This document shows positions 50,301-56,294 of a DNA stretch of 64,000 bases, in pieces. The DNA lies in NCBI GenBank assembly GCA_002269645.1, contig NIVC01002017.1, positions 148,622 to 212,621 of the forward strand. Direction: 5' to 3'. A program made the translations under genes and the position numbers. The notes beneath the pieces were generated by a model, which was given only the letters and a program-made list of their open reading frames with translations, did not search any database and was not told where the DNA came from. Origin of the DNA: Macrostomum lignano. Taxonomy: Eukaryota. Numbering within the stretch: the first letter of the stretch is position 1; the number at the start of each line of letters is the position of its first letter.

Positions 50301-53300
50301 TTCCAAGTCCGGCTGAAATGGCCTTCGGCCGAAAGCTTCGATGCGACCTGCCACGTCAGTGCAAGACCTGTGACCTCGAGAGACTTATGTCCACGACAGC
50401 GAACAAGCGAAAGAAAAAGATTTTTCAGAAAAAGCGAATCCGAGCAGCACAACAGTACGACCGCGGTGCACATCCGCTGTAGCGTCTGACGGTGAGCGAG
50501 CCAGTCTGGCTTCAGCGTGGCCGCCGGGACTGGGTGGCTGCTGAGATCGACAGCGAAGTAGGCGACTCTCTGAGATCGTACTGGGTCCGCACGGAGACCG
50601 GTCAGCTGCTGAGGTGGAATCGGCGCTTCATCCGACTTCGCAAGTTGGGCGTTCCCTTCTTCGAAAGTGACATGACAGCCAACGAGAGCATTTCCGACAT
50701 TGAGGCAGCACTGCATCTCGCCAAGCAGCCGGCGCCTGAGCAGCCGGCGCCTAAGCAGCCAGCGCCTGAGCAGCCGGCGCCTGAGCAGCCGGCGCCTAAG
50801 CAGCCAGCGCCTGAGCAGCCGGCGCCTGAGCAGCCGGCGCCTGAGCAGCCGGCGCCTAAGCAGCCAGCGCCTGAGCAGCCGGCGCCTGAGCAGCCGGCGC
50901 CTAAGCAGCCGGCGCCTAAGCAGCCGGCGCCTAAGCAGCCGGCGCCTAAGCAGCCGGCGCCTAAGCAGCCGGCACCAGCGCCGGCCCCTACTGCTAACAC
51001 GGAGTTCCGCACCAACCGGGGGCGACTTGTCAAGAAGCCGGAGCGGTTTCAACCGCGTTGGTAAAGATACCGATTAGTTCAAAGTCCCCCGTTGCCCACC
51101 CGTTAAAGATGTCGACGGCGTCGGGGTAATAACGGAATGCTTGCGAGAGTAGCTGAGGATGTCCAGCAGTTGAGGTTTGCGCACTGTCGATCCTTGATCA
51201 GCGAAACTAGAGACATTTGCAATCAGGTGTACATATGATAGTCAACTGATACCACCTGTTGAATGTCCAGAAGCTCCACCTGGATTAAGGCCAGTGACCA
51301 ACGAAGTTAGAACTGATGCAGACACATGTGGTCGACTAATTTGGAGGCTTGACAAGGCTGCAGTGAGGCGCAGTGCTGATTGACACACAGGGGGCAAGGA
51401 GTACTCTTATAGGAAAAATCCAACCTTCTGGCAGAATTGTTGACTATCTCGACTGTTCGAAGGCTGGCGACTTGATCTTTGTTTGAGAAGGTGCGTAACA
51501 AAAATGTAGTCCGCATTCTTGAATTTCGTGTGCGTGCGTTGCTCCGCTCCGGTGCAGCAAAACATCGTTAGAGCGTGGGCGAAAATTCCCCCCAACTGGT
51601 AGCTCCATGAGGAAAAAGAGCCTGGTGTTCCTACTGTTATACAGGGACGCAGAGTGCGGCCTGCAGCAGTGCTACCAGGACACGCGTCCGAGCTCGGCTA
51701 ACAGAGTGATAATCGGAAACACCACGTGCTACACACTTCCCAAAATTGATTTATCCTCGTCGGGACTTCGCAGTCCTTCGCTGGTTCCCGACGGTGCCAA
51801 GTGTGGCACCAACTCCGTAAGATGGATTGCGGGATTCATTCAAAATTTATTAATTGCACAAGCTGAAACCAGGCAAGTCATTTTTGCAACCAAAACCAAC
51901 CCGTAGATGTGCGTCAACTCCACCTGCACGCCGTTAAGCACCGTGCGCGCCTGCACGTCCTGTCCTGACTGCGGCGTCAACGGGGTGCTCACTACAGGCA
52001 GCGTCTGCTTCTGCAATCCGGGCTTCGCTCCGCCAAACTGCTCCACTGTAGGCTGCGGCGGCTCCGTGACGTCACCACTGACATGTTCGGGTGGGTATAC
52101 CGATGCAGCTTCAAACACAATACCTTTGAAGACCAAACGGACGCATTTTAATTTCCAACATTTGATTTACAGGACCTGTGGGCACGACAGCGACACCGAC
52201 TCGTGCATGGACAACTACCACCACTGGCTCAACTGCCACCACTGACACAACTGCCACCACTGACACAACTGCCACCACTGACACAACTACCACCACTGAC
52301 ACAACTGCCACCACTGACACAACTACCACCACTGACGCAACTACCACCACTGACACAACTGCCACCACTGACACAACTACCACCACTGACACAACTACCA
52401 CCACTGACACAACTGCCACCACTGACACAACTACCACCACTGACACAACTGCCACCACTGACACAACTACCACCACTGACGCAACTACCACCACTGACAC
52501 AACTGCCACCACTGACACAACTACCACCACTGACACAACTGCCACCACTGACACATCTACCACCACTGACACAACTGCCACCACAGACACATCTACCACT
52601 ACTGACACAACTACCACCACTGGCCCAACTACCACCACTGACACAACCGCCACCACTGACACAACTACCACCACTGACACAATTGCCACCACTGACACAA
52701 TTACCACCACTGACACAACCGCCACCACTGACACAACTACCACCACTGACACAATTGCCACCACTGACACAACTACCACCACTGACACAACTACCACCAC
52801 TGACACAACTGCCACCACTGACACAACTGCCACCACTGACACAACTACCACCACTGGCTCAACTGCCACCACTGACACAACTGCCACCACTGACACAACT
52901 GCCACCACTGACACAACTGCCACCACTGACACAACTGCCACCACTGACACAACTACCACCACTGACACAACTGCCACCACTGACACAACTACCACCACTG
53001 ACACAATTGCCACCACTGACACAATTACCACCACTGACACAACTACCACCACTGGCTCAACTGCCACCACTGACACAACTGCCACCACTGACACAACTGC
53101 CACCACTGACACAACTGCCACCACTGACACAACTGCCACCACTGACACAACTACCACCACTGACACAACTGCCACCACTGACACAACTACCACCACTGAC
53201 ACAATTGCCACCACTGACACAATTACCACCACTGACACAACCGCCACCACTGACACAACTACCACCACTGACACAATTGCCACCACTGACACAACTACCA

Positions 53301-56294: not shown

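What the first reader, a model, noticed from the sequence alone, without database searches (positions are those of the whole stretch)
52173..53474. ADAM protease with a ~430-aa mucin-like stalk added as one symmetric exon
Seen: between the EGF-like and TM exons, ADAM-2 has a 1302-nt phase 1-1 exon of roughly 65-70 18-bp repeats ([18 protein letters not shown]). It is stop-free and has clean splice sites. ADAM-1 has no such exon at the equivalent intron. Established: canonical ADAMs join EGF to TM through a short linker, and Thr-rich tracts are O-glycosylated rigid stalks. Inference: a catalytically intact sheddase held far above the membrane or within the mucus/glycocalyx. A symmetric exon could be skipped to give long and short isoforms, and the repeat may be length-polymorphic.
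Basis: partly seen in the sequence, partly recalled or inferred. Interest (0 to 1): 0.8.

Follow-up and report, generated by a model that had tools for sequence, protein, structure and literature searches.

The report
Flatworm ADAM protease with giant threonine stalk
A membrane protease gene of the flatworm Macrostomum lignano carries, between its last extracellular domain and its membrane anchor, a 1.3-kb block of seventy 18-base repeats that looks like a real exon for a very long sugar-coated threonine-rich stalk, but no transcript has yet been seen to include it.

Summary
At 52211-53474 there are 70.2 copies of an 18-bp unit. The stretch 52173-53474 (1302 nt) is open in the one frame that fits the phase-1 introns on both sides, and it encodes 434 aa (69% Thr, 14.5% Asp, 9% Ala). 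The window is the end of Macrostomum lignano contig NIVC01002017.1. The host gene (ADAM-2; 872 aa without the block, 1306 aa with it) is intact and has reprolysin, disintegrin and Cys-rich domains, [11 protein letters not shown] and a TM helix.

For an exon:
- The acceptor at 52173 is among the 7 best of 4345 AGs.
- It lies 82 nt after the EGF exon, the usual intron size here.
- The donor matches 7 of 9 consensus positions.
- Two UniProt gene models of a sister paralog join the EGF exon to the homologous Thr-rich start.
- Paralog P0006 has an annotated (TTTTP)n stalk after the same phase-1 intron.

Against:
- The assembly's own annotation calls no gene here.
- No transcript was seen.
- Repeat variation carries no coding signal.

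S/T-rich EGF-TM linkers of 50-95 aa occur in other ADAMs, so the idea is not new; only the length is extreme. The TM exon more likely starts at 55304 than 55271. Verdict: probably a real stalk exon (about 0.55), of moderate interest.

The parts
38388..38400 (+). ADAM-2 exon 1 (ATG + 10 nt, phase-1 donor A|GTAAGT)
   Evidence: The homeologous contig has a called CDS starting at the same ATG. Spliced to 38483 it gives the signal peptide [23 protein letters not shown].
38483..42081 (+). ADAM-2 exons 2-11: 38483-38663, 38944-39087, 39164-39455, 39531-39599, 39700-39860, 39947-40034, 40130-40284, 40374-40554, 41096-41323, 41873-42081. They encode prodomain, reprolysin ([14 protein letters not shown] Met-turn), disintegrin and part of the Cys-rich domain.
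   Evidence: Junctions were found by homology to ADAM-1/P0001 with conserved phases. Pfam: Reprolysin 5e-35, Disintegrin 2e-18, ADAM_CR 1e-14. The same exons and splice sites are intact in homeolog L001; pN/pS 0.41 over exons 1-10.
42082..51644 (+). ADAM-2 intron 11 (9.56 kb), holding a degraded, sense-oriented Ty3/gypsy-type retroelement
   Evidence: RVT_1, RT_RNaseH and integrase hits lie on broken + strand frames. Direct repeats.
51645..51816 (+). ADAM-2 exon 12 (rest of the Cys-rich domain)
51907..52090 (+). ADAM-2 exon 13, EGF-like ([27 protein letters not shown]), ends in phase 1, donor CGG|GTGGGT
   Evidence: 76% DNA identity to ADAM-1 exon 31802-31985. Junction analysis.
52091..52172 (+). 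82-nt intron between the EGF exon and the candidate stalk exon
   Evidence: The length falls in the commonest size range (72-100 nt) of the 27 other introns of the ADAM-1/ADAM-2 models, computed from the exon coordinates.
52173..53474 (+). Candidate stalk exon, 1302 nt, phase 1-1. It encodes [13 protein letters not shown]-([12 protein letters not shown]...)[10 protein letters not shown]: 434 aa, T 68.7%, D 14.5%, A 9.2%.
   Evidence: Acceptor PWM 11.2 (7th of 4345 AGs); donor CAA|GTATGT matches 7/9 of the consensus. Open only in the phase-compatible and one other forward frame. Composition. The homologous exon start is joined to the EGF exon in P0100/P0248.
52211..53474 (+). 18-bp tandem array, 70.2 copies, with higher-order blocks
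   Evidence: TRF. Unit typing shows blocks such as DEAAAABABCG x2, 8 variable positions and no indels.
53475..55303 (+). Downstream intron (1829 nt) if the exon is internal. Its first 29 nt would add SMFSILFKI and a stop (53501-53503), with ATTAAA at 53513, if the donor is not used.
   Evidence: No Pfam hits for the open stretches inside it. Not repeated elsewhere in the window or in L001/L002.
55304..55719 (+). ADAM-2 exon 14: short S/T-rich juxtamembrane segment ([26 protein letters not shown]), TM helix ([23 protein letters not shown]), Pro-rich tail with a 30-bp coding repeat
   Evidence: Homologous to annotated ADAM-1 exon 32475-32911. Hydropathy peak 3.03. Acceptor PWM 9.6 against -1.2 for 55271.
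56169..56294 (+). ADAM-2 exon 15 with stop codon
31802..32911 (+). Comparator: ADAM-1 EGF exon (31802-31985), 489-nt intron without a repeat, TM exon (32475-32911)
   Evidence: My model equals the annotated CDS PAA61586.1 (884 aa, 26443-33499).

Best explanation
52173-53474 is a genuine coding exon of the second of three tandem ADAM paralogs of Macrostomum lignano.

Shown: the gene is intact. The exon is spliced in phase 1-1 between the EGF-like exon (ends 52090) and the TM exon (starts 55304). It adds 434 residues of (T-T-A/T-T-T-D)n.

Inferred: the tract is densely O-glycosylated and, with 63 Asp, strongly acidic, so it forms an extended bottle-brush stalk. At 0.2-0.25 nm per residue it would be roughly 90-110 nm long. 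That would hold the protease, disintegrin and Cys-rich head far above the cell's own membrane. The head would then act on substrates in the glycocalyx, mucus, matrix or on neighbouring surfaces, rather than shedding juxtamembrane stubs in cis.

Because the exon is symmetric, skipping it would give an ordinary 872-aa ADAM. The array's higher-order blocks suggest recent unequal crossing-over, so its length may vary between copies.
For: 1. The acceptor at 52173 scores 11.2 with a PWM built from 28 local introns. That is 7th of 4345 AGs on the + strand. Four of the other six are real acceptors of ADAM-1/2 or homologous to ADAM-2 acceptors in ADAM-3.
2. It lies 82 nt after the EGF donor, within the commonest intron size range here (exon coordinates).
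3. The donor CAA|GTATGT matches 7/9 of CAG|GTAAGT. Only 1.3% of GTs in the window do as well, and only 10 of 41 true donors.
4. The length is a multiple of 3, and the only frame allowed by the flanking phases is open and Thr-rich.
5. My rough joint chance estimate for such an acceptor at that distance plus such a donor in phase is about 1e-4. This is an inference.
6. UniProt M. lignano models A0A1I8FWR5 (P0100) and A0A1I8FVI7 (P0248) join the EGF exon of the ADAM-3-type paralog to [30 protein letters not shown], against [30 protein letters not shown] here.
7. Paralog P0006 (BOX15_Mlig012082g1) has a phase-1 intron after its EGF exon. Its next exon opens with F-PATSTSTTTT(TTTTP)n, a 15 bp x 41.5 array in the genome, followed by a hydrophobic C-terminus.
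8. ADAM-1 and ADAM-2 exon 14 itself begins with an S/T-rich segment. Other ADAMs have 50-95 aa S/T-rich EGF-TM linkers.
9. ADAM-2 is intact here and in the homeolog.
Against: - No transcript or annotated protein containing this exon of ADAM-2 was found. The source assembly's annotation has no gene on either strand at 33500-43499 or 52049-62048. Of the three protein searches, the two that could have hit one returned no stalk-bearing ADAM.
- The P0248 model skips the array in its ADAM-2 part.
- P0100 and P0248 may be ab initio predictions.
- In its ADAM-3 part, P0248 leaves the Thr frame after about 35 residues and ends.
- An 18-bp unit keeps two forward frames open by construction. The 8 variable positions split 3/2/3 over codon positions, so there is no coding signature.
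- T at donor position +4 is not seen in 41 local donors.
- Intronic minisatellites are common in this region.
- A sense-oriented retroelement in intron 11 may impair expression of this copy.
- Proline is nearly absent, so O-glycosylation density cannot be assumed.
Confidence: 0.55

Rival explanations
1. The array is an ordinary intronic minisatellite that is never part of mature mRNA. The EGF exon splices straight to 55304, and the splice-like flanks and open frame are fortuitous or vestigial.
For: - No gene is called here in the assembly's own annotation, and no stalk-containing ADAM-2 protein is in the databases.
- Other intronic minisatellites lie nearby (27487-28816, 41347-41717).
- Two of three forward frames are open by construction.
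- There is no codon-position bias.
- ADAM-1 works without it.
- The ADAM-2 part of model P0248 omits it.
Against: - A top-0.2% acceptor sits exactly one typical intron length after the EGF donor, with a 7/9 donor in phase at the array's end.
- Thr-rich coding appears exactly where paralogs carry S/T stalks.
- The homologous start is used as an exon in two paralog models.
Confidence: 0.25
2. The acceptor is real, but the block is an alternative last exon. The weak-for-this-locus donor is not used, translation runs on for 9 codons (…[13 protein letters not shown]-stop at 53501-53503), and the transcript is polyadenylated nearby. This gives a secreted ADAM with a C-terminal Thr-rich tail and no membrane anchor.
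For: - The donor has T at +4, unseen in 41 local donors; its PWM score is 2.7-2.9.
- A stop lies 26 nt past the donor. AT-rich sequence follows, with ATTAAA at 53513.
- The ADAM-3 part of model P0248 ends inside its stalk exon without a TM.
- The homeolog's called product is 797 aa. That is about 691 aa for exons 1-13 plus about 106 aa, and fits neither the 872-aa nor the 1306-aa form. This arithmetic is only suggestive.
Against: - The exon length is an exact multiple of 3, with a 7/9 donor in the right phase for the TM exon.
- Exons 14-15 of ADAM-2 are intact and 87% identical to those of ADAM-1.
- ATTAAA in AT-rich DNA is unremarkable.
Confidence: 0.15
3. The repeat codes in another frame or on the other strand (LPPLTQ or VVSVVA), for a different gene nested in the intron.
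For: Both frames are open across the array. The commonest variants (G/A at unit position 7, C/T at position 5) are synonymous in the LPPLTQ frame.
Against: - There is no start codon in these frames within the array.
- No gene is called on either strand.
- The LPPLTQ frame is incompatible with the flanking splice phases.
- The neighbouring minus-strand open stretches have no family hits.
Confidence: 0.03

Closest known systems
M. lignano ADAM paralog BOX15_Mlig012082g1 (P0006, contig NIVC01001641.1)
   Same: It has reprolysin, disintegrin, ADAM_CR and an EGF-like exon ending in phase 1. A short intron (95 nt) follows, then a tandem-repeat Thr-rich stalk, then a hydrophobic membrane-anchor segment.
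   Different: - The unit is 15 bp (TTTTP, proline-containing), 41.5 copies (about 207 aa), against 18 bp (TTATTD, acidic, proline-free), 70 copies (434 aa).
- The stalk and the C-terminal hydrophobic end share one terminal exon with no cytoplasmic tail (it looks like a GPI signal).
- Here the stalk is a separate symmetric exon upstream of a TM + Pro-rich-tail exon.
S/T-rich EGF-to-TM linkers in other ADAMs (representatives P0102, P0205, P0174, P0241, P0229)
   Same: An S/T-rich, probably O-glycosylated, spacer lies between the last EGF-like cysteine and the TM helix.
   Different: Those linkers are 53-95 aa with 31-43% S+T and no obvious long tandem array. Here the spacer is about 480 aa including the exon-14 part, with 69% Thr. 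The source organisms of those representatives are not given by the tool.
Mucin-like domain of ADAMTS7 and ADAMTS12
   Same: A Ser/Thr/Pro-rich O-glycosylated module is inserted in an adamalysin-family metalloprotease (PMC4133867, read).
   Different: ADAMTS proteins are secreted and have no TM. Their mucin domain lies between thrombospondin repeats 3 and 4. They are a different subfamily.
O-linked sugar domain exon of LDL-receptor family members (VLDLR and ApoER2 exon 16)
   Same: A single exon encodes an O-glycosylated S/T-rich segment placed between the EGF-type domain and the TM. It is alternatively skipped to give glycosylated and non-glycosylated isoforms (PMC3113299, read).
   Different: It is a receptor, not a protease. 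The O-linked domain is short (tens of residues; from my own knowledge) and not a long tandem array. The resemblance is one of gene architecture only.
Canonical membrane ADAM layout
   Same: The order is pro, metalloprotease, disintegrin, Cys-rich, EGF-like, TM, then a cytoplasmic tail with PxxP motifs (PMC4133867; Pfam).
   Different: In the canonical description the TM follows the EGF-like domain directly. Here a 434-aa tract would intervene. ADAM-2 also lacks the RRRR convertase site present in ADAM-1.

Membership tests
ADAM (M12B adamalysin/reprolysin, membrane-anchored) | Reprolysin catalytic domain with HExxHxxGxxH zinc site and Met-turn | tested here: met
   Pfam Reprolysin E=5.2e-35, residues 198-398. 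[11 protein letters not shown] and CIM are present.
ADAM (M12B adamalysin/reprolysin, membrane-anchored) | Disintegrin domain followed by the ADAM cysteine-rich domain | tested here: met
   Pfam Disintegrin E=1.7e-18 (417-491) and ADAM_CR E=1.2e-14 (496-590).
ADAM (M12B adamalysin/reprolysin, membrane-anchored) | EGF-like domain before the membrane anchor | tested here: inconclusive
   The cysteine pattern [27 protein letters not shown] is homologous to the ADAM-1/P0001 exon, but there was no Pfam EGF hit at E<=0.01.
ADAM (M12B adamalysin/reprolysin, membrane-anchored) | Signal peptide, single TM helix and cytoplasmic tail | tested here: met
   N-terminus [23 protein letters not shown]. Hydropathy peak 3.03 at [23 protein letters not shown], followed by a Pro-rich tail. 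No dedicated predictor was run.
ADAM (M12B adamalysin/reprolysin, membrane-anchored) | Prodomain with cysteine switch and proprotein-convertase site | tested here: inconclusive
   A single prodomain Cys lies in NRCRYKV. There is no RxxR before the catalytic domain in ADAM-2, while ADAM-1 has RRRR. No Pfam propeptide hit.
Mucin-like (PTS) O-glycosylated domain | Very high Ser+Thr content in tandem repeats | tested here: met
   T 68.7% and S 1.6% over 434 aa; 70 copies of a hexapeptide unit.
Mucin-like (PTS) O-glycosylated domain | Proline-rich | tested here: not met
   Pro is 0.7% (3 of 434). Asp is 14.5% instead.
Mucin-like (PTS) O-glycosylated domain | Dense O-glycosylation of the expressed protein | not testable with these tools
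   No glycosylation predictor or experimental data were available.
Cassette (alternatively skipped) exon | Symmetric phase, so that inclusion and skipping both keep the frame | tested here: met
   Phase 1-1, 1302 nt. Both the 872-aa and the 1306-aa forms are fully open.
Cassette (alternatively skipped) exon | Functional splice sites | tested here: inconclusive
   The acceptor is top-tier (11.2). The donor is 7/9 to the consensus but scores 2.7-2.9 on the local PWM. These are sequence scores only.
Cassette (alternatively skipped) exon | Transcripts with and without the exon | not testable with these tools
   No RNA data were accessible. The only indirect evidence is two paralog gene models that use the homologous acceptor.

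The most novel reading that the evidence does not exclude
Flatworm ADAM paralogs have repeatedly grown tandem-repeat Thr-rich stalks at the same phase-1 intron after the EGF-like exon: a 15-bp TTTTP array in Mlig012082 and an 18-bp TTATTD array in ADAM-2 and ADAM-3. In ADAM-2 this has reached about 100 nm as a skippable, length-variable exon. It would act as a molecular ruler that moves an active protease from cis-shedding at the membrane out into the mucus or glycocalyx layer of the epidermis or glands.
Probability: 0.2. Interest if true: 0.5.

Novelty: new variant of a known kind. Interest (0 to 1): 0.3.

Why it matters
If the exon is expressed, this would be the longest stalk I found in an ADAM. 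It is about five times the 50-95 aa linkers seen in other family members and twice the genomic stalk of its paralog.

ADAMs are thought to cut substrates close to the membrane. How far the catalytic head sits from the bilayer therefore bears on substrate choice. A symmetric, skippable stalk exon would be a natural experiment on that question in a tractable flatworm that has transgenesis and RNAi.

It also shows how tandem-repeat exons evade transcript-based annotation. The repeat of paralog P0006 is collapsed to a third of its genomic length in the deposited protein, and ADAM-2 is not annotated at all.

If the exon is not expressed, this is just an intronic minisatellite and of no consequence.

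Tried and rejected
- Protein database searches with ADAM-2 without the stalk, with EGF + stalk + TM and with the N-terminus. None returned an ADAM-2 product or any stalk-bearing ADAM. These searches also missed P0100, which the exhaustive search later found, so their silence is weak evidence.
P0027 and P0100 are not on record as called genes.
- I could not obtain the 797-aa product called at the ADAM-2 homeolog on NIVC01001489.1, nor the DNA of that homeolog beyond exon 11. Whether the homeolog has the array therefore stays open.
- Codon-position analysis of repeat variants showed 8 variable sites, 3/2/3 over codon positions. This is uninformative.
- 'A 2.9-kb insertion into ADAM-2 relative to ADAM-1' was considered and dropped. 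The alignable part (32004-34413 against 55014-57253, 87-92%) looks like a conversion or mosaic tract. Upstream of it the paralogs are simply too diverged to align.
- A 12/14 match between the ADAM-1 intron start (ACCTGTGGCCTCGA) and the stalk exon start (ACCTGTGGGCACGA) is suggestive of an old deletion but not significant on its own.
- TE origin of the array: the flanking intron has no Pfam hits and no copies elsewhere in the window, L001 or L002. The 16-mer core of the unit occurs only in the array.
- Literature searches for M. lignano ADAMs, for the transcript ids, or for ADAMs with Thr-rich stalks found nothing relevant.
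Full report
**What is there.**
The window is eukaryotic. It is 100% identical to the last 64 kb of Macrostomum lignano assembly GCA_002269645.1, contig NIVC01002017.1: L003 equals window 52049-64000 and L004 equals window 16443-43499. Three ADAM paralogs lie in tandem on the + strand.

Tandem Repeats Finder reports one array at 52211-53474. It has period 18, 70.2 copies, 91% matches and no indels, and it is the highest-scoring array in the window. The stretch 52173-53474 is 1302 nt. 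It is open in two forward frames (TTATTD, LPPLTQ) and one reverse frame.

**Gene models.**
I used the M. lignano protein P0001 (BOX15_Mlig004569g1, from the homeologous contig) as a guide to define ADAM-1 as 15 exons, 26443-33499, 884 aa. This later proved identical in range and length to the deposited annotation PAA61586.1.

The same junctions and phases give ADAM-2:
- 38388-38400
- 38483-38663
- 38944-39087
- 39164-39455
- 39531-39599
- 39700-39860
- 39947-40034
- 40130-40284
- 40374-40554
- 41096-41323
- 41873-42081
- 51645-51816
- 51907-52090
- 55304-55719
- 56169-56294

Without the repeat block the product is 872 aa; with it, 1306 aa. Both are fully open.

Pfam finds Reprolysin (5e-35), Disintegrin (2e-18) and ADAM_CR (1e-14). 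[11 protein letters not shown] and the CIM Met-turn are present. There is a signal peptide and one strong TM helix.

In the homeolog (L001, about 95% identical) exons 1-11 and all their splice sites are intact. pN/pS over exons 1-10 is 0.41. ADAM-2 therefore looks like a living gene.

Two caveats apply. It lacks the RRRR convertase site that ADAM-1 has. Its intron 11 is 9.6 kb and holds a degraded, sense-oriented gypsy-type retroelement.

**Is the block an exon?**
The EGF exon ends at 52090 in phase 1, and the TM exon begins in phase 1. The block has tttgatttacag|GA at 52173 and CAA|GTATGT at 53474. It is therefore phase 1-1, and only the Thr-rich frame is read.

I built a position weight matrix from the 28 introns of ADAM-1 and ADAM-2.
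- The acceptor at 52173 scores 11.2. That is seventh of 4345 AGs on the strand. Four of the other six are true or homologous acceptors. No other AG in the 3.2-kb interval scores above 6.6.
- The acceptor lies 82 nt after the EGF donor. That falls in the commonest intron size range of these genes, 72-100 nt, from the exon coordinates.
- The donor is weaker on the local matrix (2.7-2.9), because T at +4 occurs in none of 41 known local donors. It still matches 7 of 9 positions of CAG|GTAAGT, which only 1.3% of GTs and a quarter of true donors achieve.

An acceptor of that quality at that distance, plus such a donor in phase at the very end of the array, would be expected by chance about once in 10^4. 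This is my rough estimate.

The repeat itself gives no coding signal. It has eight variable positions, split 3/2/3 over codon positions. It has higher-order blocks that point to recent unequal exchange.

**External evidence.**
Three word-indexed protein searches found no ADAM-2 product at all.

The exhaustive search with P0001 found P0100 (UniProt A0A1I8FWR5). This is a 301-aa M. lignano gene model from the earlier assembly. It contains exons 10-13 of the ADAM-3-type paralog, correctly spliced. It then reads ...[41 protein letters not shown], where it ends. The window's ADAM-2 reads ...[41 protein letters not shown].

A second, chimeric model (P0248, A0A1I8FVI7) shows the same junction for ADAM-3. 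It skips the array in its ADAM-2 part, and in ADAM-3 it leaves the Thr frame after about 35 residues and stops.

So the exon start predates the ADAM-2/ADAM-3 duplication, and gene finders choose the same acceptor. I could not establish whether those models rest on transcripts.

Against the exon, the source assembly's own annotation calls no gene on either strand at 33500-43499 or 52049-62048. ADAM-2 is not annotated there at all. PAA61586.1 (ADAM-1) is followed directly by PAA61587.1, a partial ADAM-3.

The homeologous contig does have a called gene starting at the ADAM-2 ATG, with a 797-aa product. I could not obtain it. Its length fits neither 872 nor 1306 aa.

**Context in the family.**
Paralog P0006 (BOX15_Mlig012082g1) has the same layout. 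Its EGF exon ends in phase 1, a 95-nt intron follows, and the last exon opens with F-PATSTSTTTT. In the genome that exon carries 41.5 copies of a 15-bp TTTTP unit before a hydrophobic C-terminus. The deposited protein keeps only about 85 aa of it.

Among 149 ADAM representatives, several have 53-95 aa S/T-rich linkers between the last EGF cysteine and the TM. Exon 14 of ADAM-1 and ADAM-2 also opens with an S/T-rich segment.

A threonine-rich stalk at this position is therefore a recurring feature and not a first. What is unusual is its size (434 aa), its purity (69% Thr), its acidity (63 Asp), the near absence of proline, and its packaging as a separate symmetric exon.

In the literature, mucin-like domains are described for ADAMTS7 and ADAMTS12, while the canonical ADAM has the TM right behind the EGF-like domain (PMC4133867). 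The closest architectural analogue is the O-linked sugar exon of VLDLR and ApoER2. It lies between the EGF-type domain and the TM and is alternatively skipped (PMC3113299).

**How it most likely works.**
- Shown: an intact ADAM gene, and a phase-compatible, splice-flanked, Thr-rich open block between the EGF and TM exons.
- Inferred: the block is included in at least some transcripts. The tract is O-glycosylated and extended, roughly 90-110 nm. It lifts the protease head out of reach of cis substrates and into the glycocalyx or mucus. Skipping it restores a conventional ADAM.
- I put 0.55 on the internal-exon reading, 0.25 on a silent intronic minisatellite, and 0.15 on an alternative terminal exon giving a secreted form. 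The last rests on the atypical donor, a stop 26 nt beyond it, and ATTAAA at 53513. Other frames or the other strand get about 0.03.

- The TM exon should start at 55304, not 55271 (PWM 9.6 against -1.2, and homologous to the annotated ADAM-1 junction).
- 'Clean splice sites' holds fully for the acceptor only.
- 'Canonical short linker' is an over-generalisation.
- ADAM-3 in this window may be damaged, or may simply be mis-assembled.

**Verdict.**
This is a real and striking repeat, probably a genuine stalk exon. It is an extreme version of something this family already does, and its expression is unproven. Interest is moderate to low (0.3).

Noticed in passing
window 1-64000: The window is the terminal 64,000 nt of M. 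lignano GCA_002269645.1 contig NIVC01002017.1 (positions 148,622-212,621). The contig, and with it ADAM-3, ends inside a GTCT microsatellite. A homeologous copy about 95% identical lies on NIVC01001489.1.
   Followed up: yes
window 60379-63735 (ADAM-3); 61649, ~62033, ~63688: ADAM-3 has a GT->AT change at the exon-5 donor. It also has single-base deletions in exon 7 and exon 10, both in short homopolymers. The deposited partial CDS PAA61587.1 (186 aa) is bounded by the two frameshifts. A UniProt model from the older assembly reads straight through. ADAM-3 is therefore either a decaying copy or carries long-read assembly errors.
   Followed up: partly
window 42082-51644: ADAM-2 intron 11 is 9.6 kb and holds a degraded Ty3/gypsy-type retroelement in sense orientation (RT, RNase H and integrase in broken frames). 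It contains a 2.7-kb piece flanked by identical 102-bp direct repeats (43536/46246) and an in-frame 15-bp repeat (50719-50973, [10 protein letters not shown]).
   Followed up: partly
window 32004-34413 vs 55014-57253: The 3' parts of ADAM-1 and ADAM-2 (end of intron 13, exons 14-15, their intron and about 1 kb of 3' flank) are 87-92% identical in DNA. The upstream exons are only about 60% identical in protein. This looks like a gene-conversion or mosaic duplication tract. Its left edge abuts a 12/14 match between the ADAM-1 intron start and the stalk exon start.
   Followed up: partly
L002 15285-16048 (paralog P0006): The genomic last exon of BOX15_Mlig012082g1 holds 41.5 copies of a 15-bp TTTTP unit (about 207 aa). 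The deposited protein has only about 85 aa of stalk and departs from the genome after residue 699. The transcript-based annotation collapses coding tandem repeats.
   Followed up: partly
window 39164-39455 vs 27037-27319: ADAM-1 has an RRRR convertase site between the prodomain and the catalytic domain. ADAM-2 and ADAM-3 have [14 protein letters not shown] there and no RxxR, so they may be activated differently or not at all.
   Followed up: no
window 27487-28816: ADAM-1 intron 5 holds two arrays of a related 14-bp unit in opposite orientation (14/42-bp periods, about 0.3 and 0.5 kb). The corresponding 1.3 kb is missing from the homeolog L001.
   Followed up: no
window 32714-32807 and 55552-55609: A 30-bp coding repeat ([14 protein letters not shown]) in the cytoplasmic tails differs in copy number between ADAM-1 (3.1) and ADAM-2 (1.9). 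It adds or removes PxxP-type motifs.
   Followed up: no
window 14858-21076 (-): A 2073-codon uninterrupted open frame rich in ankyrin repeats is part of a gene annotated with a 2742-aa product that runs beyond the fetched locus.
   Followed up: no
window 58044-58768: A 65-bp tandem repeat (11.2 copies, 98% identical, with a 324-bp higher-order period) lies between ADAM-2 and ADAM-3. It is very young or homogenised, and its function is unknown.
   Followed up: no
L001 22258 onward: The homeolog of ADAM-2 has a called CDS of 797 aa with no Pfam hit on record. It was returned by none of the protein searches. Its length matches neither the skipped (872) nor the included (1306) form of the window's gene.
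   Followed up: partly
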